The translations under genes and the position numbers were made by a program. From IMG/VR virus record IMGVR_UViG_3300042564_002819, positions 186,001 to 250,000 of that record: a DNA stretch of 64,000 nt. The stretch is one strand, 5' to 3'. Shown in pieces: positions 42,690 through 64,000 of the stretch (within the stretch, counting starts at the first letter, position 1; the number at the start of each line of letters is the position of its first letter). Below the pieces are notes generated by a model that was not told where the DNA came from, did not search any database, and saw only the letters and a program-made list of their open reading frames with translations.

Positions 42690-42692
42690 TTT

Positions 42693-44025: not shown

Positions 44026-45186
44026 ATGCGATTTAATGAAATTTCAGTGACCGAAGCCACAGTAGACAACATTAGAGTGATAAGACAGCTGACCAATGCT
44101 ATTTGGAGCAGTATACCTGAAGTGCCTGAAGGTACAGTTCGTGATGTGTATCTAAGTCAACTCAGTGGCTTTGATAGAATATACAACATGTATAAGGATC
44201 ACAGTAAGTTCAGTAAGCCGTTTGCTGTTATGGAAACTACAAAGCTTCGCATTGTTAATGATCCTGAATACCAAGATCGTTACTACAAAAAGGAGCAAGG
44301 TGTTTGGGGATATCACAGTTCAAACGATAACCTATTGTTGGTGTGGTTAGACAATATAAGAGACAGTCTGGGCTACTCACCGGACAGTCATGCTCGCAGT
44401 ACACTGGCACACGAAATACGACATCTGTTCCAGTACGCACTGTATCCCAAGTACTTTAACGATCGTCAAGCGTTTTCTAAACCCTATGAAAGTCAGCAGA
44501 TTGAAATTGATGCTGTGTGGAGTCAGCTGTTAGGATCCGAACTTGACGTAGAAGATTATAGAGGTTATCCTCAAGACTTTGTTGAAGAAGTAATCAATCA
44601 GCTAACAGCTAGAAAAAAATTGAGTAATCGAGAAATCGAACACTACCGACGCAAAACTATAAAATACTATCGTCAGTTCTTTGACGAGAATACCGAAGCA
44701 GAATGGCGTAGGCTAATTGCTAACTGGGGCCGAGAAGTACAAAAGCACAGCCACTATTCAGTTGAAAACTTTGTTGGCGATGTAATGCAAGAGCTAGATG
44801 ACTACATTGAATACAAAATCAACAATCCAAAAATCAAACAACAGGTATTAGATTACTACGCTGGCGAAACACGCAAAGAATATAAAAAGCTATCGTCAGG
44901 TCACAGACAGAATCGCAAGAGAATGGCTGCAATTGAACGTTTAGTTCCTGTATGGCAAAAAATTGTTGATCAGTATCATGATCAATGGTTTGACCCTAAG
45001 GTCAGCAGTGTTAAACTAACGATGCAGATACTCGGTGACATGAGAGACAGCATGGACCAGATTGCCGGCTCGGATTATGATTTGAGAGGTAAACTTTCAG
45101 CATGGTTTGGCAACATGACTAGAGAAAGAATTGCTAACTCACGTGAATGGTCTAAGGCACCACCGACTCCGGGAAACAGTCAATGA
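44026..45186 (+). CDS. putative Zn metallopeptidase, probable internal virion protein
   Basis: LAHEIRH...EIDA (HExxH plus E); MRFNEI N-terminus; GATAAATA at 44013. Confidence 0.6.
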   Translation: MRFNEISVTEATVDNIRVIRQLTNAIWSSIPEVPEGTVRDVYLSQLSGFDRIYNMYKDHSKFSKPFAVMETTKLRIVNDPEYQDRYYKKEQGVWGYHSSNDNLLLVWLDNIRDSLGYSPDSHARSTLAHEIRHLFQYALYPKYFNDRQAFSKPYESQQIEIDAVWSQLLGSELDVEDYRGYPQDFVEEVINQLTARKKLSNREIEHYRRKTIKYYRQFFDENTEAEWRRLIANWGREVQKHSHYSVENFVGDVMQELDDYIEYKINNPKIKQQVLDYYAGETRKEYKKLSSGHRQNRKRMAAIERLVPVWQKIVDQYHDQWFDPKVSSVKLTMQILGDMRDSMDQIAGSDYDLRGKLSAWFGNMTRERIANSREWSKAPPTPGNSQ

Positions 45187-46040
45187 GATACAGTGAAATT
45201 GCAGAACGCAAACAGCAACGCACAGAAATTATGTATCACGGTACCAGCAGTAATCTTGTGCCCAGCATACTAAAGAATGGGCTGTTGGCTGCTCCACCAA
45301 AGAAAACATATGATATTGATACCTACGGTGCTTCGACTGCTAGTATGGGCGGAGTATATGTTACGCCCTCGAGAGAATACGCAGAGGAAATATCAAGAGA
45401 GTCTGCAGAAACACACGGCGGCAAACCTGCAATGGTAACCATACAGTATGTTAGAGGCAGTGCTGATCTTGACGAGGATGATATTGTTGCTGCAATAAGT
45501 CAAGCTGCTAGTGATGTAATGCGTCGTCTTTCTCAGAAAGCACCTGCCCAAGCTGCAACTAGAGATTTTGATACACAACAGACTGCACAGCCCGATCCGC
45601 TGTCACAGTACAGTTCGTTGAGTTATCCACAAGAAGGTTGGGCGACTGACCGAATGATACGTAACAAGAAAGCGTATGCTGTGGAGATAGCAAAACAATC
45701 AATACAGCAATTAAGCAAGAAGTCAAAGCCAAGACGCACTGCATATGATTTAATTGTACAGATTGCCGCAGGATTGCTTGACCAAGCTGCACAGGAATCG
45801 GATGTGAGAGAACGTTGGAATATGATACGTTTTGGTGCGTATGACGTAGTAAGACAAAACATGGAAGAGCCATTAGGACAACTAATGCGACAGATATCTC
45901 CAGATGTGGCAGGACAGGATAGTGAAGCACCTAGAAGAATCAACAGAGACGTTAAGTTCAGCGGCAAGACCAAGATAGTTAAAATAGAAGTAGGTGATCA
46001 AGTGATTTACCCAAGAGGACAACGTAATGAGATACAATGA
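45183..46040 (+). CDS. ADP-ribosyltransferase-fold protein
   Basis: YHGTS....SIL.NGL, GVYVT; MRYSEI N-terminus. Confidence 0.55.
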   Translation: MRYSEIAERKQQRTEIMYHGTSSNLVPSILKNGLLAAPPKKTYDIDTYGASTASMGGVYVTPSREYAEEISRESAETHGGKPAMVTIQYVRGSADLDEDDIVAAISQAASDVMRRLSQKAPAQAATRDFDTQQTAQPDPLSQYSSLSYPQEGWATDRMIRNKKAYAVEIAKQSIQQLSKKSKPRRTAYDLIVQIAAGLLDQAAQESDVRERWNMIRFGAYDVVRQNMEEPLGQLMRQISPDVAGQDSEAPRRINRDVKFSGKTKIVKIEVGDQVIYPRGQRNEIQ

Positions 46041-47292
46041 TATTAAAATCATATTAGAATACGATAGATCTCGAACTGTGCAACGCTTTGGTGATAAAAT
46101 CTCTGCAAGGGCAAAGTCAGAACCTACACTGCGTGGAATAAACCCTGATTCAGTAATAGATACTGTTATGCAGGAAATAGAACAAAGTGATCCTACAGCC
46201 AATAAACAATACGTTGTGTGGATGGCCACACAGTATATAAAAGGACAACTAAAGTTTGAAGACATCTACAAACTCAAAGCGGACCTAACACAGTTTTCTG
46301 ATCCTAAGTTTAGATCAGAAATGAAACGTAGAAACATCACAGCCGACATCAATCAGTATACTCCTAGAGGATTAGCGGATCTTGTTACAAAACTATCCTC
46401 TACAGATATTGCACAACCAGATGACACTGACACCGCAGTCGAAGGTGCAAAAGTATTGTATGATGGACCGTTGGGCAAGCTGGTCATTCCGGAAACTGAA
46501 GCGGCCAGTTGTGCTTTGGGTAGCGGAACTCGTTGGTGCACCGCAGCAGACAAAAACAACATGTTCAATACCTACAGCAGTCAAGGTCCGTTGTACATTT
46601 GGTTTGAACGTAAGAATAAAAGCATTGGCAAGAAGTTTCAGTTTCATTTTGAAAGTGGCCAGTTTATGGACGCACAGGATTCACCTATCAGTGGGGAAAT
46701 ATTAGATTACTTTGCTAATCAGAATCCGGTAACTGCTAAACTGTTCAAGCAAAAGAATCCGCAGATGTATGAGTTGGTGCAGGATTGGGCTGACTATCAA
46801 GAGCGTGAACCAGATGATGATGGCGATCGTCCGTACGACGACGCACTGGAAGATCTAGAAGTAGAAAATTTCATTCCAATGCTAACAGACGAACAGTTGT
46901 TGGCACTGTTGAAAAAATATCGTTACGTTACTGATCTAAGAAAAATGGTATTGCGTGTAATTGACAGCAGCAGGCCTGCATTATCAATGGAATTGAGTAC
47001 AAAATCTCCTGCCTCGGCATATGACTACGCAAAACGCAATCCTGGAAAGGTTTCGGATGAACACATTAAGCTGATAGCCAGCGATCCGAAAACTGCTTAT
47101 TTCTATGCACAGTACGAACTCAAAGGGCCTTTTCCTGAGGGCGAAGCTGCTATTGCAACAGAACCTTCTTACTCATTCTATTATGCAGATAAGGTATTGA
47201 ATGGCAGATTCCCTGCAGGAGAACCAGCAATGAAGACTAGACCCGAGACTTGGAATCAATATCAAAAGTATATTGCTAAGTCTGGTTCTTAG
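46027..47292 (+). CDS. probable internal virion protein (G.GTRWCTA domain plus AY.YA..L.G.FP.GE repeats)
   Basis: Motifs visible in translation; MRYNDI N-terminus. Confidence 0.55.
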   Translation: MRYNDIKIILEYDRSRTVQRFGDKISARAKSEPTLRGINPDSVIDTVMQEIEQSDPTANKQYVVWMATQYIKGQLKFEDIYKLKADLTQFSDPKFRSEMKRRNITADINQYTPRGLADLVTKLSSTDIAQPDDTDTAVEGAKVLYDGPLGKLVIPETEAASCALGSGTRWCTAADKNNMFNTYSSQGPLYIWFERKNKSIGKKFQFHFESGQFMDAQDSPISGEILDYFANQNPVTAKLFKQKNPQMYELVQDWADYQEREPDDDGDRPYDDALEDLEVENFIPMLTDEQLLALLKKYRYVTDLRKMVLRVIDSSRPALSMELSTKSPASAYDYAKRNPGKVSDEHIKLIASDPKTAYFYAQYELKGPFPEGEAAIATEPSYSFYYADKVLNGRFPAGEPAMKTRPETWNQYQKYIAKSGS

Positions 47293-47623: not shown

Positions 47624-47696
47624 AGTATTGTTCTGAATAAAAAACATACAATATTTATAGCGATAAATATGTGTACTCAACAAAGGAGATCTTATC

Positions 47697-47909: not shown

Positions 47910-47921
47910 GGTAAATACACT

Positions 47922-48167
47922 ATGAGAGTAGATGAAGTATTAACCCGTGAAGATGACGTAGAAGAATGGAAAGCCAGTAAAGAGCTTTGCAAATCTAGTC
48001 GTGGAAACAACTCTTTGGGTGCTTCAGCTTTGGCCAGCTGTAAGTCGCAAGGATATCGAAGACGAGATAGCAAAGTTAAACATACCATTGGTAAAAAGCG
48101 TCAGAATATATCCGGGCGAAAAATAAAAGGCAAAGCCTATGGCGGTCCGCTGCCTGACTGGAGTTAA
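47922..48167 (+). CDS. small basic late protein
   Basis: GTAAATA 4 nt before ATG; MRVDEV N-terminus. Confidence 0.6.
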   Translation: MRVDEVLTREDDVEEWKASKELCKSSRGNNSLGASALASCKSQGYRRRDSKVKHTIGKKRQNISGRKIKGKAYGGPLPDWS

Positions 48168-48169
48168 CT

Positions 48170-48697
48170 GTGAGCCGGGTCGGAAAATTCTTAATAACAC
48201 GGCCCACAGTTGATTTAGGATTTTTTAAACAGCAGGTTATATTGCTGTATGAAGAAACTCAAGCTGGTACTGCTGGTGTTTGCCTAACTTACCCTACTCA
48301 TCTTTGTTTAAAAGATATAGCATTGCAAATGGGAGTTGACTATCCTACAAAGCTTCATCCGATTTACAAAGGTGGTCCGATTGCTCAGTCATCGATAGTA
48401 ATGATTCACACAGATGAATTTATTACTGCTAACACTTTGCATACAGGTAAGGGTATAGACATATCATCAGACGACCTAATGATTCTAAAACTTTTGGAAG
48501 GCAACGAGCCAAAAAAGTTTAGATTGATTGCAGGAGGATGTCGATGGTTACCAGGACAGCTTGATCGAGAAATTGAAAGAGGATTTTGGTTAGTATCTAA
48601 TTTAAAAAAAGAAATAGCATTTGACTTAGATAAAGAACAACAGTGGAAGGCCGCAATCGAACATGCAAGTAGTGAGTTGGTTGCACAGTATTTTTAG
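48170..48697 (+). CDS. YqgE/AlgH (DUF179) family protein
   Basis: F...VILL, G..G..L, GGP, G...W..GQL..EI..G.W. Confidence 0.8.
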   Translation: MSRVGKFLITRPTVDLGFFKQQVILLYEETQAGTAGVCLTYPTHLCLKDIALQMGVDYPTKLHPIYKGGPIAQSSIVMIHTDEFITANTLHTGKGIDISSDDLMILKLLEGNEPKKFRLIAGGCRWLPGQLDREIERGFWLVSNLKKEIAFDLDKEQQWKAAIEHASSELVAQYF

Positions 48698-48705
48698 AGG
48701 TAATT

Positions 48706-49056: not shown

Positions 49057-49075
49057 AATAGAAAGAACTTAAAAA

Positions 49076-49606
49076 ATGTCAGACACATTGCTTATTAACG
49101 CAGACGGCCAGCCAGTTAGTCTAGTGCCTCTAAGTGCGGTAAGCTGGAAAGAAGCAATCCTATATATGTACCACGACAAGTGCGATGTATTGGAATGGTA
49201 CGACGATTGGGTTGTGCATTCGGCTAATTGGGAAACAAAAGTCCCGGCGGTAATCATGCTACGTGATTACCTACGCAGAAACACATCACCACGCTTCTCG
49301 AAGAGCAATGTGTATCTGCGTGACCTTTATACTTGCCAATACTGCAATACTAAAGTGACCAACAAGACTGCAACCATGGACCACGTAATTCCTTTGAGTC
49401 GTGGCGGAAAAACCAGTTGGGAAAATATTATCACAGCTTGTGCTCCGTGCAACAGTCGCAAAGCTAACTTTAGTCGCATGAAGCCTAACTACAAGCCGTA
49501 TCAACCGGGCTACTACGAATTAGTTCGCAAGCGTAAGCAAATGCCATTTGATGTCAAGCACGAAAGCTGGTATCAATGGTTAGGGCTTGATGACGTAATA
49601 GCGTAG
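49076..49606 (+). CDS. HNH endonuclease
   Basis: RD.Y.CQYC, DHVIP.SRGG...WEN...AC..CN..K. Confidence 0.9.
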   Translation: MSDTLLINADGQPVSLVPLSAVSWKEAILYMYHDKCDVLEWYDDWVVHSANWETKVPAVIMLRDYLRRNTSPRFSKSNVYLRDLYTCQYCNTKVTNKTATMDHVIPLSRGGKTSWENIITACAPCNSRKANFSRMKPNYKPYQPGYYELVRKRKQMPFDVKHESWYQWLGLDDVIA

Positions 49607-49608
49607 AA

Positions 49609-50201: not shown

Positions 50202-50432
50202 ATGGAAGATGATGTAATCAAGGTTAATGTTGCACTTTTTATGCGTTTGTTAGAGCTTGCTAGAGAAGATGTCAAAGATGATATGAGTTTGCATTTTGTT
50301 ACTGAAATAGTCACACGACTCAGTCAAGACCGTGTTGTAACCATGGATGATTATGATAACATTCTTGCTTACATGAACAAGAATAAAAAGAGTGATGAAT
50401 TAGAGACTATCAAGCGACTAGGCGGAATATAA
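50202..50432 (+). CDS. hypothetical late protein
   Basis: ATAAATA; AGGAG SD. Confidence 0.6.
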   Translation: MEDDVIKVNVALFMRLLELAREDVKDDMSLHFVTEIVTRLSQDRVVTMDDYDNILAYMNKNKKSDELETIKRLGGI

Positions 50433-50737
50433 TGAGAGCAACTGATGTAATTAGAAGTGTATTAGATTTAATTGATCAAATGGATACAGGTAGTGGTCAT
50501 CGTCAGAACCCTCCCGAACTGTTACCCACATACAACGATGATGGAGAATTGGTATCTCGATTCCGTCAAATATATCAAATACTGGACAATCGAGATTCAC
50601 CAACACAGTACAGCAATACACCTAATGAGGTTGTAACTGATGTTGCTAGTGTAACAACTGATGTAGGCGGCGGTCCTAACGGTATCAAACATCCAGATGA
50701 TATACGTGTTAAAGATCCACAAGGATACAGACAATGA
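50432..50737 (+). CDS. hypothetical late protein
   Basis: Coupled ORF; MRATDV N-terminus. Confidence 0.6.
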   Translation: MRATDVIRSVLDLIDQMDTGSGHRQNPPELLPTYNDDGELVSRFRQIYQILDNRDSPTQYSNTPNEVVTDVASVTTDVGGGPNGIKHPDDIRVKDPQGYRQ

Positions 50738-51654
50738 GTGCAAACGGAATTAGCAATCTTGCAACAAAAGAACTAAGACAAAAAGCCAAACTTGAATTAG
50801 CTGCCGTTGAACGTGCTGCTGACGGTCGTAGATCAGTCTATGATTTATCCGAATTGCCTACAAAATATGTTGGAAACACTGTGGTAAACAATCTCAACAG
50901 TGGCGGACTAGTACTAGGACGTCCTTGGAGTTCTACTGAAACTCCTAACTTGTTCTCAGGGTTGGCCATATGGTATGACACAGCTACAGCATCAACTATC
51001 AACGGTGGTACATTCTCAGATGGCACTACTGTTACCGCATTAACCAACAGAGCAACTGGTACAAATGGTGCTGGAGGTGGTACTGGACGAGAGCCAACAG
51101 TGCAGAATGGTGTGGGTGATACACTCAACGGTTATCCTGTGATTAGATTTGCCACAGCCACTACATACGATAATATTAGATTTACCACCAATGCCTTTGA
51201 CAATGCCACAGGATGGACTGTGGTTATGTTAGCAAAAACAGTTATCACAGGGGGATTCAACCCTGCCTTGTTTATGATAACTGATTCTTCACAAGTCAGT
51301 ATAACTGGAGTTAGATATTTTGGCGGCAGTCAATTTATATTCTATACCCCTGCGGGATCAGCCAATGTAGCCAGCAGTATAGATCCAGACGGCACTTGGA
51401 AGATTATCACAATGCGTTACGATAGCACAGCAGCCGTGGCCAGTAGATGTACGTTTAGATGGGCTAAGGTAGCAAGAACTGTGACCAACGGTGGCACACC
51501 ACCAAGTGGAACTGTTCCGGCCACAGCGACCTATGTTGAAACTATGAGTGCATTTGACGGCGACCTTGCAGAACAAGTAGCTTACAACCGTGCGTTGTCA
51601 GACGCAGAAATCACAGCCCTAGAAGACTACCTCAGCAGCAAATGGGGAGTATAA
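50734..51654 (+). CDS. virion protein with LamG/lectin-like C-terminal domain
   Basis: L..WYD, NG.P.IRF, F.GDLAE...YNRALS..EI..LE.YL..KWG. Confidence 0.6.
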   Translation: MSANGISNLATKELRQKAKLELAAVERAADGRRSVYDLSELPTKYVGNTVVNNLNSGGLVLGRPWSSTETPNLFSGLAIWYDTATASTINGGTFSDGTTVTALTNRATGTNGAGGGTGREPTVQNGVGDTLNGYPVIRFATATTYDNIRFTTNAFDNATGWTVVMLAKTVITGGFNPALFMITDSSQVSITGVRYFGGSQFIFYTPAGSANVASSIDPDGTWKIITMRYDSTAAVASRCTFRWAKVARTVTNGGTPPSGTVPATATYVETMSAFDGDLAEQVAYNRALSDAEITALEDYLSSKWGV

Positions 51655-51657
51655 CCT

Positions 51658-53502
51658 GTGCCTAATTTAAATCCCAACAGCACCAACTACGTTCACAGTT
51701 ACGAGCCAAACACCAATGACCTTACCATGGCCATGGACTACAACACCAACGGCGAACCAGTCATACGCACCATTGTCGAAGGTGTTACCATTGAAGGTGA
51801 TGTTACTGTAGACAAAGTTAGACTGTGGGACGGCACCAACGATCTGTTCTTTGATTCAACAGTCAACGACGGAGAATCATCTCCTACCGCGGTATTGCCC
51901 ACAGAAAGTCACAGCATGGTTTACAACGGTTCGACTTGGGACCGCTTGCGTGGCAATATCACAGATGGTGTACTTACACAGATCAGCAACGATTACCTAG
52001 CCATCAGCAAAGACACCAATGCCAACAGCGACAGCAATCGCATCTTTGTTAATGCTACGGGCACTGTAGAACTAGGTACCACAACACTGGCAGCATTGGA
52101 AACAATCACAGTTAACCAAGGTACCAATCCATGGACTGTAAACGGCAATATCAATGCTACCATCGACGGCGAAGTATCAGTAGCAGGATCCAATCCAGAC
52201 GCATTTGGTCGTGCTAGAATCAGCGAACTGTTTACTCTAGGCGACTACAAACATATCTATGCTGTAGATCCAAACTTCCTTGACGGGTTAGCCAATGGCG
52301 GTTCTGTGACATTTCTTCCTGATCAAGCCGCTTGTGTGTTAGCCACCAGCAGCAACTCTGCTAGTTCTGCCATACACCAAACCAAATTCTATCATCACTA
52401 CCAACCAGGCAAGAGTCAGTTAATCTACAGCAGTTTCAACTTCCGTGCTCCTAATCGCAATGTGACCAAACGCACAGGATACTTTGATGCCAACGACGGT
52501 ATCTATTTTGAACAGGTGGGCAGTGACACAGCAGATGGAAGTACTGTAAGTCCTACTACGCAAACATTGAACTGGGTTATAAGATCTTATGTGGGCGGAA
52601 GTCCTAGCGAAGCAACTTTTAATACAACTGTTAATGGATTGGCCTATGTATATAAACGCCGTGTACCGCAAAGTGAATGGAACGTAGACAAATGTGATGG
52701 CACAGGACCTAGTGGATTTAAATTAGATATTACCAAAACACAGTTAGCCTGGATAGATTTCCAATGGTTGGGTGTAGGCCGTGTTCGTTGCGGATTCGCC
52801 CACCAAGGAGAACTGATCACCGCACACGAATACTATCACGACAATGTTTTGCCCACAGTCTATTTGAGCAATCCTAACCTTCCTGTTCGCTGTGAAATAC
52901 GCAATACTGGAACAACCCCAGGAGGTGCCTTTGATCAGATCTGTGCCACTGTGATGAGTGAAGGCGGCTATGTGGAATCGGGCATTGACTGGAGCGTGTA
53001 TACCGCACCTCGTACTACACCTACTCCAGGACAGACACGTTTTCCTTTGATTGCTATTAGATTGAAAAACACATTTAATGGTTATCCTAATAGATTGAGT
53101 GTGCGTCCTAACAGCCTAGGATTGTATGCTGAAACCAACAGTATCTTATTTGAAGTAGTTAAGTTCCCTAATGCTGCTAGTCTTAGCACCACCGATCCTG
53201 GGGGGCTGGTGTGGACATCGGCAGATGCTGACAGTGGCGTAGAATACTGTGTAAATGCCACAAGTTTCACAGCCGCAAATGGTGATCGATTTGCTTCTGG
53301 ATATGTGCCTAGCGGATCAAGTCAAAACAGTCTAAGTCCGGTGGCTACCGGTACTCTGACTGCGGCAAAGAAAAATATCATCAGTCAAAACATTGACAGC
53401 ACCAATTCTGAAGTATATTGTGTATTAGTCAGCACAGTTAATGCTGGCAATCAAACTACAGCCACAGTGGCCGCAACTATACAGTGGCGAGAGATTTATT
53501 AA
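51658..53502 (+). CDS. virion structural protein (tail or fibre-associated)
   Basis: DAFGR.R.S, YQPGKS, DFQWLGVGRVR.G motifs; T/S/N-rich. Confidence 0.6.
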   Translation: MPNLNPNSTNYVHSYEPNTNDLTMAMDYNTNGEPVIRTIVEGVTIEGDVTVDKVRLWDGTNDLFFDSTVNDGESSPTAVLPTESHSMVYNGSTWDRLRGNITDGVLTQISNDYLAISKDTNANSDSNRIFVNATGTVELGTTTLAALETITVNQGTNPWTVNGNINATIDGEVSVAGSNPDAFGRARISELFTLGDYKHIYAVDPNFLDGLANGGSVTFLPDQAACVLATSSNSASSAIHQTKFYHHYQPGKSQLIYSSFNFRAPNRNVTKRTGYFDANDGIYFEQVGSDTADGSTVSPTTQTLNWVIRSYVGGSPSEATFNTTVNGLAYVYKRRVPQSEWNVDKCDGTGPSGFKLDITKTQLAWIDFQWLGVGRVRCGFAHQGELITAHEYYHDNVLPTVYLSNPNLPVRCEIRNTGTTPGGAFDQICATVMSEGGYVESGIDWSVYTAPRTTPTPGQTRFPLIAIRLKNTFNGYPNRLSVRPNSLGLYAETNSILFEVVKFPNAASLSTTDPGGLVWTSADADSGVEYCVNATSFTAANGDRFASGYVPSGSSQNSLSPVATGTLTAAKKNIISQNIDSTNSEVYCVLVSTVNAGNQTTATVAATIQWREIY

Positions 53503-53517
53503 GAGATAAATAACATT

Positions 53518-53808
53518 ATGCGTATGGACGAGATCACAATAAACATTCCGATTACCATTGATCTAGATGGGGTTAAACCACGTGTGAATGTTGCAGGCAA
53601 GGATGCCAAGGACGATGAAGAACTTGATCAAAATCCTGTGATGATGAATCCACTACAACAAGAACTAGAACTCAAGAAAGCAGAGTTGGGCAAAAAGTCA
53701 CCGGTTATCAATAAAATGATCGATGACGAAACTATAGGCGAAGAACCAGCAGATGATCAAGAAGATAGCATTGCTAATCTAAAAACACTAGCAGGTTTGC
53801 AACGATAA
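53518..53808 (+). CDS. acidic late protein
   Basis: GATAAATA 5 nt before ATG; MRMDEI. Confidence 0.6.
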   Translation: MRMDEITINIPITIDLDGVKPRVNVAGKDAKDDEELDQNPVMMNPLQQELELKKAELGKKSPVINKMIDDETIGEEPADDQEDSIANLKTLAGLQR

Positions 53809-53830
53809 ATACTCTAACTAGGGTATTTAG

Positions 53831-56467
53831 ATGGCATTCACACAAGATTTTCGCACTCAAAGACGCAATTACAATGACGGCGATACTCGCTTAGGCGAAA
53901 AGGATCGTCTGTGGTATGATAGTATTACCAACAGCATACGCATCGGCGACGGCGAAACTCCTGGCGGTGTAGCAGTCGGAGGAGCAGGTGGTAGCAGCTA
54001 CACATTGCCTACTGCAACTACCACAGTCAAAGGTGGTGTTAAAATCGATGGCACCACTATCACAATCAACAACCAAGTTATAAGTGGATTCAGTGGCAGT
54101 TACAACGACCTAACCAACAAGCCCACAATACCCACAAACACCAATCAGTTGACCAACGGTGCTGGATTTATTACCGGTTATACAGAAACTGATCCGGTGT
54201 TTGTAGGACATGCGTCCTACAATATAACCAGCACACAGATAACAAACTGGGATACAGCATATGGGTGGGGTGATCATGCCGGCGCAGGATACTTAACATC
54301 AGTTGGTACAATCAGTTACAACGATTTATCAAACAAACCCACACTATTCTCAGGTAGTTATACTGATTTGTCTAATAAGCCTACACTGTTCTCGGGTAGT
54401 TATAATGACCTAACAGATAAACCTAATCTCAGTAGCACATATCAATTTTCAGTTGCAGGCGACGATTCGACTCAACGACTAATAAGCACAGGCGAAACAG
54501 TTAAATTTATAGGCGCAGGCGGAATCACCACCAGTAGCGATGCAGAAGGTGCTGTTACAATTACCCAGGGTAGCACAGATAACATAATTAAGGTTGCTGG
54601 ATCATTCGGGACTGAAAGCCCATTCAAGTCTGAAGTTGTTGCTGATCTTGCCACTGGTGTTAGAATTAGCACTTGGTGGGGTCTTCCAGCATTTGCTACT
54701 GAAGAACGCTGGCAGTTTGACTATGACGGGATACTAACATTCCCGGACGGTACAGAACAAGCAACCGCCTGGACTGGTACAAGCACCACCCTACAATGGA
54801 CTGCCGCTGAATTTTTCCCAAGTGCCCCTGCACAAACAACTATAACGGCCGGCGATGGTGCTGTTGATATCAATTTAGTAACAGGTATACCTGGTTCATC
54901 AACTTCGGTAAACTGGTCTTTCACTAATCAAGGTACTATTGAGTTCCCAGACAGCACTACACAATACTCTGCCTACACTGGCGATAGTTCTACCACTGAA
55001 GCACTGACTATTGGCACAGGACTGAGTGGAACAAGTTTCAACGGCAGCACCGCAGTTACTATTGCACTGGATGATAACTATGGCGACACAAAGAATCCTT
55101 ATGCCAGCAAGACGGCAAAATATTTCCTAGCTGCACCAAATGCAGACAACGGTGCTCCAACATTCCGTGCTATTGTTGCTTCAGATATACCTACACTAAA
55201 TCAAAACACCACAGGATCTGCCGCAACATTGACTACAGCCCGTGCTATCAATGGCGTAGACTTTGATGGTAGTGCGGCTATTACTATAACAGCCGCCGCA
55301 GGAACACTAACTGGCACAACATTAAACTCAACAGTAGTATCTAGTAGTTTAACCAGTGTAGGTACACTTACATCGTTGACTTCTAGTGGATTAGTAAGAT
55401 TCAACAATGCTGGAGTAGGCGCATCATATAATGCCGCTGGTAACTCTGTTAACATTGGCGGAGTATTAGGTGTCGCTTCAAACATCTATGCTAATGGTAA
55501 CATAGACATTGTTGCCGGTAGTGCTTACTACATAGGTGGTAATACTGTATTGAACGGCAACACATTAGGCAGTAACATTGTTAATAGTAGTTTAACATCA
55601 GTTGGAACACTAACAAGTTTAAGCAGTGGTGCTATCACAACAACAGGTACACTAGCACTAAATGCCAGTGGCGGTATTACTACCAATCAAACTACATTCC
55701 CGTTAGTTAACACAACGGCAACTACAGTAAACTTTGCCGGTGCAGCCACAGCATTGAATATGGGCGCAAGCACTGGTACTACCACAATCAACAATAACTT
55801 GTCAATGGCCAGTGGCAAAACTATAGGTACAACTGCTAGTATCACAAGTAATGCCGCAACAGCGTTCATTGCTGGTACTGCCGCTGAAAGTGGTGTAGCA
55901 TTACAAATGCCGCTTGAAGGTGCTCTACGTAATCTTACTAACGGACTTACTAATATGTATTTCGATGTTAGCACTGGCGGAACAACTCAGGGACAGTTCC
56001 AGTTCCGTAGTAGCAACGCATTCACCAATGTGTTGACTATGAGTCCTACTGCGTTTAATGTTAACACTGGCGCAACTGTAACAGCAAGAACACCTAGTCT
56101 TGGTAGACTGCCATTCAATTCTGCAATCGACACTGAACTAACCATTGATGATATGCGTTTCCGCATCAGCAACCAAGGCGGTATATTTCCGCAGGTTATT
56201 GGCAACGGTTCATCAAGGAATCTTGCCTGGACAGTAGTAGCCGCAAGAAACGGTAGTGCAATTCAACAAACAGGTAGCACCGGTACTATTGTATCAAGCA
56301 GTGCTTGGACTAGTTTATATACTGCTGCCGGCATGGACGCCTCTGGCGATACTTATACAGCTACACTACAGGATAAAGCAGCAGGTCGTATCTATCGTGT
56401 GACATTTATGCGTAGCGACAACGGTACTACAACAGGTTACAATATTATAGCCGAACGTATATTATAA
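53831..56467 (+). CDS. tail fibre protein
   Basis: 878 aa, T/G/S-rich; IGDG.TPGG, FSGSYNDL.NKP repeats, FPD.T.Q, SSLTSVGTLTSL twice. Confidence 0.8.
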   Translation: MAFTQDFRTQRRNYNDGDTRLGEKDRLWYDSITNSIRIGDGETPGGVAVGGAGGSSYTLPTATTTVKGGVKIDGTTITINNQVISGFSGSYNDLTNKPTIPTNTNQLTNGAGFITGYTETDPVFVGHASYNITSTQITNWDTAYGWGDHAGAGYLTSVGTISYNDLSNKPTLFSGSYTDLSNKPTLFSGSYNDLTDKPNLSSTYQFSVAGDDSTQRLISTGETVKFIGAGGITTSSDAEGAVTITQGSTDNIIKVAGSFGTESPFKSEVVADLATGVRISTWWGLPAFATEERWQFDYDGILTFPDGTEQATAWTGTSTTLQWTAAEFFPSAPAQTTITAGDGAVDINLVTGIPGSSTSVNWSFTNQGTIEFPDSTTQYSAYTGDSSTTEALTIGTGLSGTSFNGSTAVTIALDDNYGDTKNPYASKTAKYFLAAPNADNGAPTFRAIVASDIPTLNQNTTGSAATLTTARAINGVDFDGSAAITITAAAGTLTGTTLNSTVVSSSLTSVGTLTSLTSSGLVRFNNAGVGASYNAAGNSVNIGGVLGVASNIYANGNIDIVAGSAYYIGGNTVLNGNTLGSNIVNSSLTSVGTLTSLSSGAITTTGTLALNASGGITTNQTTFPLVNTTATTVNFAGAATALNMGASTGTTTINNNLSMASGKTIGTTASITSNAATAFIAGTAAESGVALQMPLEGALRNLTNGLTNMYFDVSTGGTTQGQFQFRSSNAFTNVLTMSPTAFNVNTGATVTARTPSLGRLPFNSAIDTELTIDDMRFRISNQGGIFPQVIGNGSSRNLAWTVVAARNGSAIQQTGSTGTIVSSSAWTSLYTAAGMDASGDTYTATLQDKAAGRIYRVTFMRSDNGTTTGYNIIAERIL
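54313..54423 (+). repeat. 42-bp (14-aa) coding tandem repeat SY.DL.NKPTLFSG
   Basis: Three units; a fourth related unit near 54090. Confidence 0.8.
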
Positions 56468-58154: not shown

Positions 58155-58156
58155 AA

Positions 58157-58837
58157 ATGGGCGGAAATGTATTCATAGATGTTGTGCCATTTGACCATTC
58201 TCAAATAGGTGCAATTGCAGAACATTTAGATTCTGTACTGTCTCAGATTGGAGTTTCTGTTATTCCAATTGGTAGTACAGCCAATCCGGTTGTAGGTAAA
58301 AAAAGCGGAGACTTCGACGTTCTTGTTGAAGAAAGAATCCTAGCACAGGTTTTCAATGAAGACAATCCTAGAAACATTAGAAAAAAATTAAAAGACTTAT
58401 TTGATAAGTCTGGCGATACAACTACATTAAATGGAATTGCCGTTCATGTACGAGTTCCAATTAACAACGAAGCTTATCAAGCAGATATATTAGTCACACC
58501 TCAGGCAAAAGAAGTAAGCAAGTTTCACATACACAAAATACCTGCCAATTCTAAGTACAAAGGTGTACATAAGCATCTTGCTATGATGTACCTTGCAAAA
58601 TCAAAAGGTTTGCTTTGGAGTGCGTTTCAAGGTTTGTTTAATAGAAACAAAGAAGGAAAACGTGGAGACTTTATAACTAACAAATTAGATACAATTGCTT
58701 ACTTGTTGATCGGAGTAAACGGTAAAGAACAAGACTTTGATTGTTTTGAAAGTATTGTAGCAGCACTTCCTGTTGATGTTGCAAATAAAATGATTGCAGA
58801 CTTGAAAGAAGATCCTAGCTGGAAAGAAATTGCATGA
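58157..58837 (+). CDS. Pol-beta-superfamily nucleotidyltransferase-like protein
   Basis: IGS.......SGDFDVLV and later QAD. Confidence 0.6.
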   Translation: MGGNVFIDVVPFDHSQIGAIAEHLDSVLSQIGVSVIPIGSTANPVVGKKSGDFDVLVEERILAQVFNEDNPRNIRKKLKDLFDKSGDTTTLNGIAVHVRVPINNEAYQADILVTPQAKEVSKFHIHKIPANSKYKGVHKHLAMMYLAKSKGLLWSAFQGLFNRNKEGKRGDFITNKLDTIAYLLIGVNGKEQDFDCFESIVAALPVDVANKMIADLKEDPSWKEIA

Positions 58838-59769
58838 AAATTTTTGAAGTAATTAGAAGTAATGAAATAAATCCTAACATGGCCAGAACAGCAGAGTTGA
58901 CAGCTGACTATGCTGACCGAGTAACACCAACCAATCACAAAATTGGCAACTGGAATATATTTGAAATTAAGCCTGGAGTACGTAGCCGTGCTGAATTAAT
59001 GCTATTTGTTGGGGTCGAAGACGGACCTAATGAATTACCTGAATTGTACGGACAGCTTGCATTACTAAAGCAACCGCACCAAGGCAAAGACTTTGTGTTT
59101 TCCGAAATATACTTTGATCCTGTTTTACAAGGAAAAGGAATTGCATTACAGTTGTACAAACTGGCTATAGAAAAATATGGATACACAATTGTAAGCGACA
59201 CCAGTCAAACAAAGGGCAGTGAAAAACTTTGGAATTCTCTTGCAAGAGATCCACGCATTAATGTTTATGCATGGGAAACCGATAGCGATTCTTTTAGAGA
59301 ATTTGACCCAGATGATCCAGACGATGTGTATTATGATCCTAGCGAAATAAACATACTTAAAAAAGAACTATCAGACATACAAGATCGTCTACATCAGCAA
59401 TACATGTCTGGCAATATCGACGACGATGAATACGGAAATTTATTAAAACAGTATGCTGATCCGATATATGACGACCTAGAAGCAATGGAAAGAGCACAAG
59501 ACACTCGTTTGGTTGCAACAGCAAAAAATATAAAGACAACAGTATCTGAGGCTGTACTCAACGAACAGCCAGTTCTTTCTAGTTGGATAACTGACATTAC
59601 CTTACAAAAAAATGAACGTGATGTCACAATGACATTGGGCAACGGACGTAGATATAAGGTTGCAAGTGTTGGCAGACCTGTGTATACTGCTTGGGTAAAC
59701 AGCAACTCTAAGGGAAAATTTTGGCACACAAATATCAAACGTCGTCATCGAGTATTGAGACTTTTGTAA
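58834..59769 (+). CDS. GNAT-like domain plus C-terminal KTSC-like domain protein
   Basis: LQGKGIA..LY, SD..QT.G...LW..L; C-terminal SS.I...Y.....VY..W..S.SKGKF...NIK. Confidence 0.55.
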   Translation: MKIFEVIRSNEINPNMARTAELTADYADRVTPTNHKIGNWNIFEIKPGVRSRAELMLFVGVEDGPNELPELYGQLALLKQPHQGKDFVFSEIYFDPVLQGKGIALQLYKLAIEKYGYTIVSDTSQTKGSEKLWNSLARDPRINVYAWETDSDSFREFDPDDPDDVYYDPSEINILKKELSDIQDRLHQQYMSGNIDDDEYGNLLKQYADPIYDDLEAMERAQDTRLVATAKNIKTTVSEAVLNEQPVLSSWITDITLQKNERDVTMTLGNGRRYKVASVGRPVYTAWVNSNSKGKFWHTNIKRRHRVLRLL

Positions 59770-60803: not shown

Positions 60804-60911
60804 TTCGTGTTTTAACCCCATTATCATAAGTATTTTTGCTTCTATGGTAAATAATAATAACAATACTTACGGAGCGTAAGTTTGTTGCCATAGAGTACAA
60901 GGAGATTTAAA

Positions 60912-61322: not shown

Positions 61323-61341
61323 TAGTTGTAAAACTAAAATC

Positions 61342-61372
61342 AAAGGGTTCGCGTTTTGCGGACCCTTTTTTT
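61342..61372 (+). terminator. rho-independent terminator
   Basis: AAAGGGTTCGC-GTTTT-GCGGACCC-TTTTTTT. Confidence 0.85.
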
Positions 61373-61391
61373 ATGACCGATAAGTAATGTT

Positions 61392-61793
61392 ATGAGATTT
61401 CAGTTATTAACACTTATAGATATTACACAGACTCGTGCTCGAAAAGGTGACGACAGTTTTTTACAAAAGCAACAGCAAAACTATCTTACTGCCATACAAA
61501 CTATAAGTATGCGAGCAAATCCAGAAATACGCACAACAACTAGTTGTGATGACAGAGATATAACAGGATTAGGTTTTGGCACATTGTATAAAGGCAACCA
61601 TCGAGTATGGAAACTAAATTTTAATTTTGAGTTTGACAACAGTCATTCAATTGACACATTAAAGTTTGATTTTAATTTAGTCCCTGTTATTAAAAACTTA
61701 AACGAAACAGTTGACTTAGAAGATGCTGCGTTTATAACAAGCTCAGAAGAACTCAACAACATAGTGTTTCTCAACTTAGACGATTTTACATAA
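61392..61793 (+). CDS. hypothetical late protein
   Basis: TLIDIT.T motif; GATAAGTA before ATG. Confidence 0.6.
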   Translation: MRFQLLTLIDITQTRARKGDDSFLQKQQQNYLTAIQTISMRANPEIRTTTSCDDRDITGLGFGTLYKGNHRVWKLNFNFEFDNSHSIDTLKFDFNLVPVIKNLNETVDLEDAAFITSSEELNNIVFLNLDDFT

Positions 61794-61866
61794 TATGATA
61801 AATATACAAAAGGCAAGAACAAAGGCATTTAAAAATATTCATTACTGTCGCAAAATGGAGAAATAA

Positions 61867-62106
61867 ATGTCGACTGCCTTAACAACTGACTTAGAAAAAG
61901 AAAGCCTTGAAGCACACGTTGATTTATGTGCATTAAGATATCAACAACTAGATAATCGTTTGACCAAGGTAGAAGGAAAACTTGATAGTATTTCTGCAGA
62001 AATGAAATCAGCCAACCAATCATTAGTCAAGGTTATAATCGGTGCCGCTGCTACTATTAGTTCTGGCTTGCTCGGAACAATCGTAGTAATGTTAATGAAA
62101 TTCTAA
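61867..62106 (+). CDS. coiled-coil protein with C-terminal membrane helix
   Basis: LEAHVDLCA.RY; hydrophobic C-terminus; GGAG SD. Confidence 0.6.
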   Translation: MSTALTTDLEKESLEAHVDLCALRYQQLDNRLTKVEGKLDSISAEMKSANQSLVKVIIGAAATISSGLLGTIVVMLMKF

Positions 62107-62123
62107 ACACGATAAATAACTTT

Positions 62124-62399
62124 ATGTTATTGCGTGAATTATTTGATCAACCTGTAAATGAAAAAGTAGTGTGGGGGAGAACTGGTAAATCAGTTGTTCG
62201 CAAATATCGTTGCTCCGGCGGGAAACGACACGGTCGTGTTGTTAGCAAAATGGCACAATGTTTTGCTCCACTTGACTTTAAACAGAGTGCAAGTTTTAAG
62301 CGAACCAAATCGAGATTTGGCAGACGCATGGCTAGAAAAGCTGGAAGAACAAAGCGTGTAAATCCTGCTAGTCGTAGAATACAAGCGTTGAACAGATAA
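62124..62399 (+). CDS. small basic late protein
   Basis: GATAAATA 5 nt before ATG; MLLREL. Confidence 0.6.
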   Translation: MLLRELFDQPVNEKVVWGRTGKSVVRKYRCSGGKRHGRVVSKMAQCFAPLDFKQSASFKRTKSRFGRRMARKAGRTKRVNPASRRIQALNR

Positions 62400-62428
62400 C
62401 AAACAGCGGACAGAAAGAAAATAAGATA

Positions 62429-62860
62429 ATGCGAGCAGATGAATTTATTAACAGCGACGAAAAGCTAGACGAAATATTACCTCTTATTGGAATGGCTGCC
62501 GGGGCGGCTGCTAGATCAGTAGCAGGCATGGCTGCTAAACAGGTTGGAAAAGCTGTAGCAGGCGCCGCTGCACAGAAAATAGGACAAAAAGTTGCCGGAA
62601 TGGCAGGCTCGCAAAAACAACCAACATTGCCCGGCGATAACACAGCCTATGCAGACGTTGATAGAGCAAAAGATGCTTTATTGCAACCGGGAAAAAAGTT
62701 AGTGCTTCCAACTCAAGCCGGAACCCCTCAAGCATTCAAGATTACAAAAGTAGCAGGCGATGAAGTAGAAATAGAAAACCCGGATGCAATTAAAGATCCT
62801 AGCCAGCCAGATAAAATTACTTATAACAAGCAAGATATTAAGAAATCGATATCAATATGA
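62429..62860 (+). CDS. probable internal head protein
   Basis: MRADEF...LDEILP, Ala/Gly-rich. Confidence 0.55.
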   Translation: MRADEFINSDEKLDEILPLIGMAAGAAARSVAGMAAKQVGKAVAGAAAQKIGQKVAGMAGSQKQPTLPGDNTAYADVDRAKDALLQPGKKLVLPTQAGTPQAFKITKVAGDEVEIENPDAIKDPSQPDKITYNKQDIKKSISI

Positions 62861-63063
62861 AATTTAATGAGTTAATTAAAGAATTTTCAATACAGATGAG
62901 CAATGAAGAAAAAACATTGCTTGACAAGATATCAAAACCGTGTTATGTTGAGTCATTCTCACAGAGAGAACAATATGTGATTGAAAACTTAATTAAAAAA
63001 AGTTTGCTTTCAAAGGTATATTATAAAGGTAGCACGGTAGTAATTCCAAATGAAAGACCTTGA
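62857..63063 (+). CDS. hypothetical protein
   Basis: Coupled ORF; MKFNEL. Confidence 0.55.
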   Translation: MKFNELIKEFSIQMSNEEKTLLDKISKPCYVESFSQREQYVIENLIKKSLLSKVYYKGSTVVIPNERP

Positions 63064-63478
63064 CATAGCTATTCAGGAACTTGAAGACATAATCGACTCT
63101 AAAATGAACAATTTTTCGTTGCCTTATAAAAAGGGCAACAGTGTCAGACTCGGACATATTGTCATAAGAAAAAGCAAAAATCTCGGATATATAGTATTCG
63201 ATACTAAACTAAACAAACCCATAACAACTACTTTTAGTATAACAGGGGCTCTTGCCGTAGCAAAAGCTTCTATTAAAAAGTCTCCAATTTATACTATTAT
63301 GAAATACGATAACATAATAGAAAAAAATTATAATGACAGTCAATTTTATTCTCACATCATACATGGAAACGCCAGCGAGTCTCGCAAAAAAGCAGTAGCT
63401 TCTCGTCTTGAAATATCGAAGACAAAAATCGATGCTGCAAAAAATGCTCTTGATGAGTTCATTATGAAAGATATGTGA
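63050..63478 (+). CDS. hypothetical protein
   Basis: Coupled ORF. Confidence 0.55.
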   Translation: MKDLDIAIQELEDIIDSKMNNFSLPYKKGNSVRLGHIVIRKSKNLGYIVFDTKLNKPITTTFSITGALAVAKASIKKSPIYTIMKYDNIIEKNYNDSQFYSHIIHGNASESRKKAVASRLEISKTKIDAAKNALDEFIMKDM

Positions 63479-63510
63479 TAAATAAATTAAACAATTCCAG
63501 GAACCCAACC

Positions 63511-64000
63511 ATGAACATAAGAGAATTTGCTAAACCAGTTACTGCTAAGTCGTTAAACGAAAGCCTTGCTGCTCGATTCGGACAAAAGATTAATTTAGAG
63601 CGTTTTACAATAGAACAGCTTCAAGATGCACGTAATAGATTGCGTACAAAACTAAGTCAAGTAGAAACAAACGAATCGTTTGACGCTGTTCATAATGAAA
63701 CTTATCAAAAATCAAAAATGATGCTTGATGTATTAAATGCTGCTCTTTCCGAAAGAGGACATGTTGAAGAAGACACTTCAACTAAGCGTTTAAGAGAAGG
63801 CGAAGAAGACAAAGCTGAATTGGTAATGTCAGCTAAAGACATGGTTGATCGTCTAACTGGTTGGATGGAAGATGTAGCAGAAATGCAAACAGAATCTATG
63901 CTTGAACTTGCTGACGCAATTCGCGACGAGCTAGGACAAGAATCTTCAGAAGCATTTGTTGGATTGGTAAAGCCTGCACTTGACAGCCTCTACCAAGCTA
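63511..64000 (+). CDS. acidic helical late protein, possibly prohead core (3' truncated by window)
   Basis: MNIREF...; GATAAATA and AGGA upstream; frame open to the window end. Confidence 0.55.
   Translation, partial: MNIREFAKPVTAKSLNESLAARFGQKINLERFTIEQLQDARNRLRTKLSQVETNESFDAVHNETYQKSKMMLDVLNAALSERGHVEEDTSTKRLREGEEDKAELVMSAKDMVDRLTGWMEDVAEMQTESMLELADAIRDELGQESSEAFVGLVKPALDSLYQA

What the first reader, a model, noticed from the sequence alone, without database searches (positions are those of the whole stretch)
44026..63530. Shared N-terminal M(R/K)xx(E/D)-hydrophobic tag marks putative injected cargo
MRFNEI, MRYSEI, MRYNDI, MRVDEV, MRATDV, MRMDEI, MKIFEV, MLLREL, MRADEF, MKFNEL and MNIREF begin otherwise unrelated late proteins, often with a later xxE site (VTEA, ILEY, VNE, LDE, LNE). 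This resembles the T4 capsid-targeting sequence MKTYQEFIAE, which the prohead protease removes after Glu. It predicts a set of head-packaged proteins.
Basis: partly seen in the sequence, partly recalled or inferred. Interest (0 to 1): 0.6.

Follow-up and report, generated by a model that had tools for sequence, protein, structure and literature searches.

The report
Capsid-targeting tag on jumbo-phage cargo
A short N-terminal peptide, M-R/K-(Y/F)-x-E/D-hydrophobic followed by a hydrophobic-x-Glu site, heads about a dozen unrelated late proteins of this 330-kb T4-related jumbo phage and most likely loads them into the phage head and is then cut off, as the capsid-targeting sequence of phage T4 is, which gives a readable list of the proteins the phage probably injects.

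Summary
All 11 quoted N-termini lie at + strand ORF starts. The motif M[RK]xx[ED]h heads 9 of 25 genes in 44026-63530 against 6 of 404 elsewhere in the genome (p = 7e-9). It is encoded by varying synonymous codons, and the proteins are otherwise unrelated.

The genome is a Rak2/PA5oct-like jumbo myovirus with a T4 gp21-type prohead protease.

In three protein families (46, 107 and 16 homologues) the tag is kept. It is followed, after a spacer of variable length, by an invariant (I/L/V)-x-Glu at the junction with the conserved mature domain. That is the T4 gp21 cleavage rule.

The tag reads like the T4 internal-protein sequence MKT(Y/F)xEF, one residue shorter.

In Pseudomonas phage PA5oct, 7 of 11 tag-bearing proteins were detected in virions by mass spectrometry, against 86 of 434 others (p = 0.002). 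These include the orthologues of two window proteins.

The tagged proteins include an ADP-ribosyltransferase-fold enzyme (as T4 Alt is) and two proteins that would be very basic once cut.

Packaging, cleavage and injection remain untested for this phage. I rate it a new variant of a known kind, with interest about 0.6.

The parts
44026..45186 (+). 386-aa tagged protein of unknown function. Tag and predicted propeptide MRFNEISVTE|A occupy 44026-44055.
   Evidence: In 16 full-length homologues the junction is always (L/V/I)-x-E followed by A or S. The orthologue in L010 begins MKYQDLVVSE|A.
44013..44020 (+). GATAAATA, a T4-late-promoter-like motif 5 nt upstream of the ATG. The same arrangement occurs at 53505-53512 and 62111-62118.
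   Evidence: That it is a late promoter is inferred from the T4 consensus TATAAATA.
45183..46040 (+). 285-aa protein with an ADP-ribosyltransferase fold (PARP/Tpt1-like). Tag and predicted propeptide MRYSEIAE|R occupy 45183-45206.
   Evidence: Pfam PARP E = 1.7e-5, below the cut-off. AF2 with alignment gives pLDDT 82 with residues 1-10 disordered. Foldseek hits are Tpt1/KptA and PARP14/15. In 46 homologues P3 is I/L/V, P1 is E and P1' is R/K without exception, with propeptide lengths of 8-14.
46027..47292 (+). 421-aa tagged protein, orthologue of PA5oct virion protein EST35_0205. Tag and predicted propeptide MRYNDIKIILE|Y occupy 46027-46059.
   Evidence: Of 120 homologues, 92 begin with the strict tag, and 107 have (L/I/M)-x-E|Y before the conserved YDRSKT.
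47922..48167 (+). 81-aa tagged protein. The acidic predicted propeptide MRVDEVLTREDDVEE|W occupies 47922-47966. The mature 66 aa are very basic (pI 10.7), like a T4 internal protein.
   Evidence: Orthologues keep (V/I)-E-E|WKAS.
50432..50737 (+). 101-aa acidic protein with tag MRATDV. No canonical cleavage site was found.
   Evidence: The orthologue in L021 begins MRATEI.
53518..53808 (+). 96-aa acidic protein with tag MRMDEI. It has a late-promoter-like motif 5 nt upstream and no early hydrophobic-x-Glu site.
58834..59769 (+). 311-aa protein with tag MKIFEV and a C-terminal KTSC-like domain. The only early site is SNE11, which is non-canonical.
   Evidence: The orthologue in L010 has an identical N-terminus.
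62124..62399 (+). 91-aa protein. The predicted propeptide MLLRELFDQPVNE|K occupies 62124-62162. The mature 78 aa have pI 12.0 (25 K+R, 1 D+E), like a T4 internal protein. The N-terminus resembles T4 Alt MELITELFD.
   Evidence: The orthologue in L021 begins MLLRELSSVNE|K.
62429..62860 (+). 143-aa protein with tag MRADEF and candidate site LDE15.
62857..63063 (+). 68-aa protein with tag MKFNEL. Candidate site IKE9 is not conserved in the L021 orthologue.
63050..63478 (+). 142-aa protein beginning MKDLDIAIQE. A weaker candidate: it fits the strict pattern and has IQE10.
63511..64000 (+). 311-aa protein that runs off the window to genome 250446. Tag MNIREF, candidate site LNE17. Orthologue of PA5oct virion protein EST35_0237.
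   Evidence: phrog_14154, virion structural protein.
50734..56467 (+). Context: untagged virion structural genes lying between the tagged ones. These are 50734-51654, 51658-53502 (phrog_1645) and 53831-56467 (tail-fibre-like).

Best explanation
The tag is the capsid-targeting propeptide of this phage lineage. It is an unstructured N-terminal peptide of 8-17 residues, M-(R/K)-(Y/F)-x-(E/D)-(I/F/V/L), followed after a short variable spacer by (I/L/V)-x-Glu.

Proposed mechanism:
1. The tagged proteins are made late.
2. The tag binds the scaffolding core while the prohead is built, so the protein is enclosed.
3. The gp21-type prohead protease (genome 139582-140208) then cuts after the Glu. This frees the mature protein inside the head.
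4. The mature protein leaves the head with the DNA at infection.

The cargo in this window is:
- an ADP-ribosyltransferase-fold enzyme (45183);
- two small proteins that become extremely basic once the acidic propeptide is gone (47922, 62124), comparable to T4 internal proteins;
- several proteins of unknown function, two of which (46027, 63511) have orthologues found in PA5oct virions.

What is shown: the tag, its enrichment, its conservation at the peptide level, the invariant cleavage-type site, the protease homologue, and the virion association in PA5oct.

What is inferred: binding to the core, cleavage, location in the head rather than elsewhere in the virion, and ejection.
For: 1. The tag heads 9 of 25 genes in the region against 6 of 404 elsewhere, p = 6.6e-9. 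Codons vary synonymously. The proteins are unrelated beyond the tag.

2. Conservation in homologues:
- ART family: 47 of 51 begin with the strict tag. At the junction P3 is I/L/V in 46 of 46 and P1 is E in 46 of 46. P2 takes 8 different residues, and the propeptide is 8-14 residues long because of indels.
- gp205-like family: 92 of 120 carry the strict tag. P3 is L/I/M in 107 of 107 before E|Y, with lengths of mostly 9-17.
- 44026 family: (L/V/I)-x-E|A/S is kept even where the tag itself is shortened.
This matches the T4 gp21 rule of cleavage after Glu in L/I-x-E (PMC9026906, PMC5694885).

3. The genome has a gp21 homologue: Peptidase_S77, 90.8 bits, and 34% identity to T4 gp21. It lies in the gene order portal, protease, phrog_10922 protein in the scaffold position, major capsid protein.

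4. Likeness to the real T4 tags. T4 residues 4 and 7 carry targeting and residues 8 and 10 carry processing (PMC9026906). They map onto tag positions 3 (Y/F) and 6 (I/F), with the same i to i+3 spacing, and onto the hydrophobic-x-Glu site.

5. PA5oct (major capsid protein 67% identical, syntenic). The strict tag is on 7 of 93 mass-spectrometry-positive and 4 of 352 mass-spectrometry-negative CDS: odds ratio 7.1, p = 0.002, or p = 0.005 counting only ORFs of 60 aa or more. The orthologues of 46027 and 63511 are mass-spectrometry-positive and tagged (MKLFEV, MFLKDV). The tagged EST35_0150 lies between portal and protease, where T4 has the core genes 67 and 68.

6. In the AF2 model of the ART, residues 1-10 are disordered before the first strand.

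7. In related contigs the tag sits only on genes of the structural-gene strand: 10 of 26 + strand genes in L021 and 2 of 14 in L020, against 0 of 32 minus-strand genes in the two loci. There it heads a Phage_lysozyme2 protein, a weak Peptidase_M15_3 hit and a weak NT5C hit.
Against: - There are no proteomic or cleavage data for this phage or a close relative.
- The PA5oct 'virion' list also contains obvious non-structural enzymes (ribonucleotide reductase, ClpP, FtsH). Mass-spectrometry-positive is therefore an imperfect proxy, and it says nothing about head against tail.
- Four tagged PA5oct proteins were not detected.
- Three or four of the eleven window proteins lack a conserved canonical site (50432, 53518, 58834, 62857).
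- Some tagged proteins elsewhere in the genome look like ordinary enzymes. One is the cytidylyltransferase-like protein at genome 10369, whose PA5oct orthologue is untagged and was not detected in virions.
- The register differs from T4 by one residue.
- The complex prediction of protease with the tagged N-terminus gave no verdict.
Confidence: 0.7

Rival explanations
1. The tag directs proteins into the virion, but not as cleaved, ejected head cargo. It could be an assembly handle for neck, tail or decoration proteins, or it could stay uncleaved.
For: - The tagged genes are interleaved with tail-fibre-like and other structural genes.
- The PA5oct mass spectrometry does not localise proteins within the particle.
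- Several tagged proteins have no canonical site.
Against: - The invariant (I/L/V)-x-Glu at the junction in three families is the signature of the head protease, which acts inside proheads.
- The sequence resembles the T4 head tags.
- A tagged PA5oct protein lies between portal and protease.
Confidence: 0.13
2. The shared N-terminus is a recognition signal for regulated proteolysis or another N-terminus-reading factor, for example ClpX-type N-terminal motifs of the form Met-basic-hydrophobic. It would set the lifetime of these proteins and would not serve packaging.
For: - PA5oct is annotated with ClpX, ClpA, ClpS and ClpP, and L011 carries a ClpS gene.
- The tag begins Met-basic-aromatic.
- The resemblance to ClpX N-motifs is from my own knowledge and was not tested.
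Against: - It does not explain the conserved hydrophobic-x-Glu junction or the enrichment among virion proteins.
- Positions 4-5 of the tag are polar and acidic, not hydrophobic.
Confidence: 0.05
3. The tag is a relic of shared ancestry or of recombination. A common 5' module would have spread among cassette genes in a plastic region and would have no present function.
For: - The tagged genes cluster in two plastic-looking regions.
- Cargo sets differ between related contigs.
Against: - There is no DNA-level conservation at the 5' ends.
- The pattern is held by purifying selection at the amino-acid level in families at 30-60% identity.
Confidence: 0.05
4. The tag is an effect of translation initiation or of leaderless mRNA, such as A-rich second codons or constraints on the first transcribed bases.
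For: - K and R are common at position 2 genome-wide.
- Four tagged genes have ATAAATA 4-5 nt before the ATG.
Against: - Eight of the thirteen genes with that promoter arrangement have no tag.
- Synonymous codons vary.
- Positions 3, 5 and 6 and the distal Glu site are conserved as amino acids.
Confidence: 0.03

Closest known systems
[quoted passage not shown]
   Same: - An N-terminal propeptide of 10-19 residues on otherwise unrelated proteins.
- The same order of residues: Met, basic, aromatic, polar, acidic, hydrophobic, ending in L/I-x-Glu (MKTYQEFIAE|A and MKTFKEF...ITE|A).
- A gp21-type protease is present.
- Small basic mature proteins are among the cargo.
   Different: - One residue shorter before the Glu (MRYxEF against MKTYxEF), with Arg preferred over Lys.
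- Many more tagged genes per genome (about 20 against 3-4).
- Larger enzymes are tagged.
- The lineage is the Rak2/PA5oct-like jumbo clade, not Tevenvirinae.
- Function is untested.
T4 Alt, the head-packaged and injected ADP-ribosyltransferase with a short N-terminal propeptide
   Same: - An ART-fold enzyme behind a short N-terminal tag that ends in hydrophobic-x-Glu.
- The Alt N-terminus MELITELFD resembles MLLRELFD at 62124.
   Different: The 45183 protein has 285 aa and its fold matches the PARP/Tpt1 side of the ART superfamily. It is not detectably related to Alt (682 aa). Its target is unknown.
Propeptides of the ejection proteins of phiKZ, 201phi2-1 and SPN3US
   Same: - Jumbo phages that pack many proteins into the head.
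- A related prohead protease that cuts after Glu (PMC5694885).
   Different: Their cleavage motif is A/S/G-x-E, most propeptides exceed 100 residues, and no short common N-terminal tag is reported.
Dar (defence against restriction) head proteins of phage P1
   Same: Anti-defence cargo loaded into heads during assembly and injected.
   Different: Loading depends on partner proteins and ordered incorporation. No common cleavable N-terminal tag of this type was compared here. This comparison rests on my own knowledge and on the titles and abstracts listed.

Membership tests
T4-type capsid-targeting sequence (CTS) propeptide | A short (about 10-20 aa) extension at the extreme N-terminus of otherwise unrelated proteins | tested here: met
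   Residues 1-10 are disordered in the ART model.
T4-type capsid-targeting sequence (CTS) propeptide | It ends in a gp21-type cleavage site, L/I-x-Glu | tested here: met
   (I/L/V)-x-E is invariant at the junction in three families despite indels. This is sequence evidence only. It is not met for 50432, 53518 and 58834.
T4-type capsid-targeting sequence (CTS) propeptide | The phage encodes a gp21-family (S77) prohead protease within a portal/scaffold/capsid module | tested here: met
T4-type capsid-targeting sequence (CTS) propeptide | Sequence likeness to MKT(Y/F)xEF, with the targeting residues (T4 positions 4 and 7) conserved | tested here: inconclusive
   The residue order and the aromatic-to-hydrophobic i to i+3 spacing are the same, but the tag is one residue shorter. 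The sequences are too short for a homology statistic.
T4-type capsid-targeting sequence (CTS) propeptide | The tagged proteins are present in virions | tested here: inconclusive
   Only by proxy. PA5oct orthologues EST35_0205 and EST35_0237 are flagged ESI-MS/MS, and the tag is enriched among the 93 mass-spectrometry-positive proteins, p = 0.002. There are no data for this phage.
T4-type capsid-targeting sequence (CTS) propeptide | The tag is cut off in the mature head, and it is sufficient to package a foreign protein | not testable with these tools
   Needs a semi-tryptic mass-spectrometry search and a tag-GFP fusion.
ADP-ribosyltransferase superfamily (for the 45183 protein) | ART fold with an NAD-binding His-containing motif | tested here: inconclusive
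   Pfam PARP 24.8 bits, below the 26.7 cut-off. Foldseek finds Tpt1/KptA and PARP14/15 at E about 0.01, probability 1.0, over 73-95 columns. The motif MYHGTS is invariant in 46 homologues. The catalytic residues were not mapped.

The most novel reading that the evidence does not exclude
The tag is a clade-wide cargo-loading code of the Rak2/PA5oct-like jumbo phages and their marine relatives. From sequence alone it would spell out each phage's injected arsenal: 10-20 proteins per genome, differing between relatives. These include an ART, cell-wall hydrolases, a 5'-nucleotidase-like protein, a zeta-toxin-like kinase and basic DNA-binding proteins. These phages would then deliver a sizeable enzyme cocktail for takeover and counter-defence, and the tag could be reused to load chosen proteins into jumbo capsids.
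Probability: 0.4. Interest if true: 0.72.

Novelty: new variant of a known kind. Interest (0 to 1): 0.6.

Why it matters
Head-packaged, injected proteins are a phage's first move against host defences, but outside T4 and the phiKZ group they can rarely be predicted from sequence. This tag is simple and conserved, sits at the very N-terminus and ends in a cleavage-type site. If it is what it appears to be, it turns a long list of 'hypothetical proteins' in a widespread jumbo-phage clade into a testable catalogue of injected cargo. That clade includes isolates on Pseudomonas, Vibrio, Erwinia, Serratia, Cronobacter and Sinorhizobium, plus many marine contigs. The finding also extends the T4 capsid-targeting principle to a distant lineage with a different consensus. 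That is useful for understanding how the tag binds the scaffolding core, and for loading foreign proteins into large capsids.

Tried and rejected
- Megablast of the region against GenBank phages: no match.
- The search for related loci in viral contigs with the 46027 protein alone: nothing confirmed.
- PDB sequence search with the 45183 protein: nothing.
- Single-sequence AF2 of the 45183 protein: useless, pLDDT 38. It was repeated with a 46-row alignment.
- Complex prediction of the prohead protease with residues 1-40 of the ART: 'no answer', score 0.00. This is evidence neither for nor against binding.
- PA5oct peptide-level data: no supplementary files are held, so N-terminal coverage could not be checked. 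The main text of the PA5oct paper does not mention N-terminal processing.
- Literature searches for a capsid-targeting sequence in jumbo, Rak2-like or cyanophage contexts found only T4, SPN3US/phiKZ and P1 work. This is an absence in the held library, not proof of novelty.
- Rejected: a DNA-level cassette or promoter explanation, a leaderless-mRNA effect, and a shared paralogous domain.
- First impression corrected: the best hits of one neighbouring gene were T4-like cyanophages, but the capsid protein and synteny place the genome with the Rak2/PA5oct-like jumbo phages.
- No alternative genetic code was used, and read laying and the look-up of sequencing runs were not used.

Full report
**What the window is.** The window is bases 186001-250000 of a 330,024-bp virus record that is about 93% complete. 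The record encodes a T4 gp21-type prohead protease: Pfam Peptidase_S77, 90.8 bits, at genome 139639-140079. That protease is 34% identical to T4 gp21 over the catalytic core, including the ...HP... and GVSSRG motifs. It lies in a T4-like head module of portal, protease, a phrog_10922 protein in the scaffold position, and major capsid protein.

One neighbouring gene has its best hits in T4-like cyanophages. The capsid protein, however, is 67-71% identical to those of Vibrio phage 2.275.O, Sinorhizobium phage Phosso, Pseudomonas phage PA5oct, Serratia phage BF, Pectobacterium phage CBB and Cronobacter phage GAP32. By N-terminal sequences and gene order, genome 175204-183562 looks collinear with PA5oct EST35_0200-0209. 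The genome is therefore a marine-type member of the Rak2/PA5oct-like jumbo myoviruses, which keep a T4-type head-assembly machinery.

**The observation.** I made a simple gene call of the whole genome (429 ORFs). The pattern M[RK]xx[ED][IVLFM] heads 9 of 25 genes in 44026-63530 and 6 of 404 elsewhere (Fisher p = 6.6e-9). After internal methionines it occurs in 0.4% of cases.

The conservation is at the peptide level. Arg is CGA, AGA or CGT, Glu is GAA or GAG, and the upstream DNA differs between genes. With the first 20 residues removed, the tagged proteins show no similarity to each other, apart from one paralogous pair outside the window.

A second cluster of tagged genes lies at genome 10369-13611. 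Isolated cases head a zeta-toxin-like P-loop kinase (genome 302593) and a 268-aa protein (genome 55444).

**Conservation in homologues.** The word-based protein search was run for three tagged proteins.

- *46027 family.* Of the 120 listed homologues (27-79% identical), 92 begin with the strict tag, typically MR(Y/F)x(E/D)(F/I). A spacer of variable length follows, and then an invariant (L/I/M)-x-E|Y before the conserved YDRSKT.
- *45183 family.* Of 51 homologues, 47 begin with the tag. I anchored on the invariant MYHG motif, so the Glu was not imposed by the method. The junction residue is Glu in 46 of 46, P3 is I/L/V in 46 of 46, and P2 takes eight different residues. The propeptide is 8, 9, 11, 13 or 14 residues long because of indels.
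- *44026 family.* The 16 full-length homologues all have (L/V/I)-x-E followed by A or S. This holds even where the tag itself is shortened, as in MYKKLNE|AS and MRTQPLHE|AS.

The small proteins at 47922 and 62124 keep (V/I)-E-E|WKAS and V-N-E|K in their orthologues. An invariant hydrophobic-x-Glu at a junction that tolerates insertions is what a protease site looks like. It matches the T4 gp21 rule of cleavage after Glu in L/I-x-E (PMC9026906, PMC5694885).

**Comparison with T4, from the T4 record itself.**

| T4 protein | N-terminus |
|---|---|
| IPII, IPIII | MKTYQEFIAE\|A |
| IPI | MKTFKEFTSTTTPVSTITE\|A |
| Alt | MELITELFDED |
| gp24 | MAKINELLRE\|S |
| gp22 | MLKEQLIAE\|A |

The tag here has the same order of residue types (Met, basic, aromatic, polar, acidic, hydrophobic), one residue shorter. 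According to the review of Black's work, targeting in the T4 sequence depends mainly on residues 4 and 7 and processing on residues 8 and 10. These map onto the two best-conserved hydrophobic positions of the tag, 3 (Y/F) and 6 (I/F), and onto P3 and P1 of the site. MLLRELFD (62124) resembles Alt's MELITELFD, and VTE|AT (44026) resembles IPI's ITE|AT.

**Experimental proxy.** PA5oct has a published virion proteome. Its GenBank record flags 93 of 445 CDS as 'ESI-MS/MS' (the count agrees with the abstract of PMC7318152). The strict tag stands at the annotated start of 11 CDS.

- Seven are mass-spectrometry-positive: EST35_0150, 0175, 0205, 0230, 0238, 0380 and 0381.
- Four are not: 0075, 0264, 0382 and 0422.

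This gives an odds ratio of 7.1, p = 0.002, or p = 0.005 if only ORFs of 60 aa or more are counted. EST35_0205 (MKLFEV) is the orthologue of the 46027 protein, and EST35_0237 (MFLKDV) is the orthologue of the 63511 protein. EST35_0150 (MKINDIITE|G, 73 aa) lies between portal and protease, where T4 has the prohead-core genes 67 and 68. Most of these PA5oct proteins have a hydrophobic-x-Glu at residues 8-11.

This proxy has two limits. The PA5oct list also contains plain metabolic enzymes. It also does not say where in the particle a protein sits.

**The cargo.**
- *45183.* This protein folds well with an alignment (pLDDT 82), and residues 1-10 are disordered. Its N-terminal domain matches Tpt1/KptA and PARP14/15 catalytic domains (Foldseek probability 1.0, E about 0.01). 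Pfam PARP scores just under its cut-off. This makes it a functional parallel to T4 Alt, though it is not a relative of Alt.
- *47922 and 62124.* After the predicted cut, the 47922 protein has 66 aa with pI 10.7, and the 62124 protein has 78 aa with pI 12.0 and a single acidic residue. Almost all their acidic residues are in the predicted propeptide, as with the small basic T4 internal proteins.
- *Related contigs.* The tag heads a Phage_lysozyme2 protein, a protein with a weak Peptidase_M15_3 hit and one with a weak NT5C hit. None of 32 minus-strand genes in L020 and L021 carries it.

**Timing.** GATAAATA lies exactly 5 nt before the ATG of 44026, 53518 and 62124. This resembles the T4 late promoter TATAAATA (established knowledge). 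The tagged genes lie among virion structural genes. 'Late' is therefore inferred, not shown.

**Rivals.** The main rival is a virion-assembly handle without head location or cleavage. I give it about 0.13, because the mass spectrometry does not localise proteins and three or four of the window proteins lack a canonical site. A degradation signal, a recombination relic and a translation or leaderless-mRNA effect fit the data poorly. Each is set out with its evidence in the Rival explanations section.

**Verdict.** It is a new variant of a known kind: the T4 capsid-targeting principle, in a distant jumbo-phage clade, with its own consensus and a much larger, enzyme-rich set of tagged proteins. 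I found no description of it in the held literature. The decisive tests are a semi-specific re-search of virion mass-spectrometry data and a tag-GFP packaging test.

Noticed in passing
genome-wide; in the window at 44014-44020, 53506-53512 and 62112-62118: ATAAATA (T4-late-promoter-like) sits exactly 4 or 5 nt upstream of the start codon of 13 genes, out of 43 occurrences within 60 nt upstream of a gene. There is no room for a Shine-Dalgarno sequence. This suggests leaderless or near-leaderless late mRNAs. Only 4-5 of these genes carry the tag.
   Followed up: partly
window 24000-43000, mostly the minus strand: A block with 43-52% G+C between flanks of 33-38% and 37-45% G+C. It is filled with small minus-strand ORFs, most without a Pfam match, plus an AAA-ATPase-like protein (35057-36055) and a cell-wall hydrolase (31238-31825). 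Related contigs also have a run of small minus-strand genes just upstream of the tagged cluster.
   Followed up: partly
window 1-23200, + strand: A low-G+C block holds sugar and envelope-type biosynthesis genes: glycosyltransferase families 25 and 8, a DAHP_synth_1 (KdsA-like) enzyme and a carbamoyltransferase. Beside them are a ResIII/DEAD helicase and a DnaB-like helicase.
   Followed up: partly
window 48170-48697 and 49076-49606: An AlgH-like DUF179 protein and an HNH endonuclease sit inside the tagged cluster. Both recur at the same place in related contigs L010, L020 and L021.
   Followed up: no
genome 11959-12186 (outside the window) and PA5oct EST35_0203: A related N-terminus, MNIEDLKRLAGI, and MFNINDILRLAGV in a PA5oct virion protein. 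They share a '(D)(I/L)xRLAG(I/V)' continuation, which may be a sub-type of the tag.
   Followed up: no
genome 302593-303324 (minus strand) and genome 10369-11886: Outside the main cluster the tag heads a zeta-toxin-like P-loop kinase (MKINEI, with ATAAATA 4 nt upstream) and a cytidylyltransferase-like protein (MQLREL). The PA5oct orthologue of the second is untagged and was not detected in virions.
   Followed up: partly
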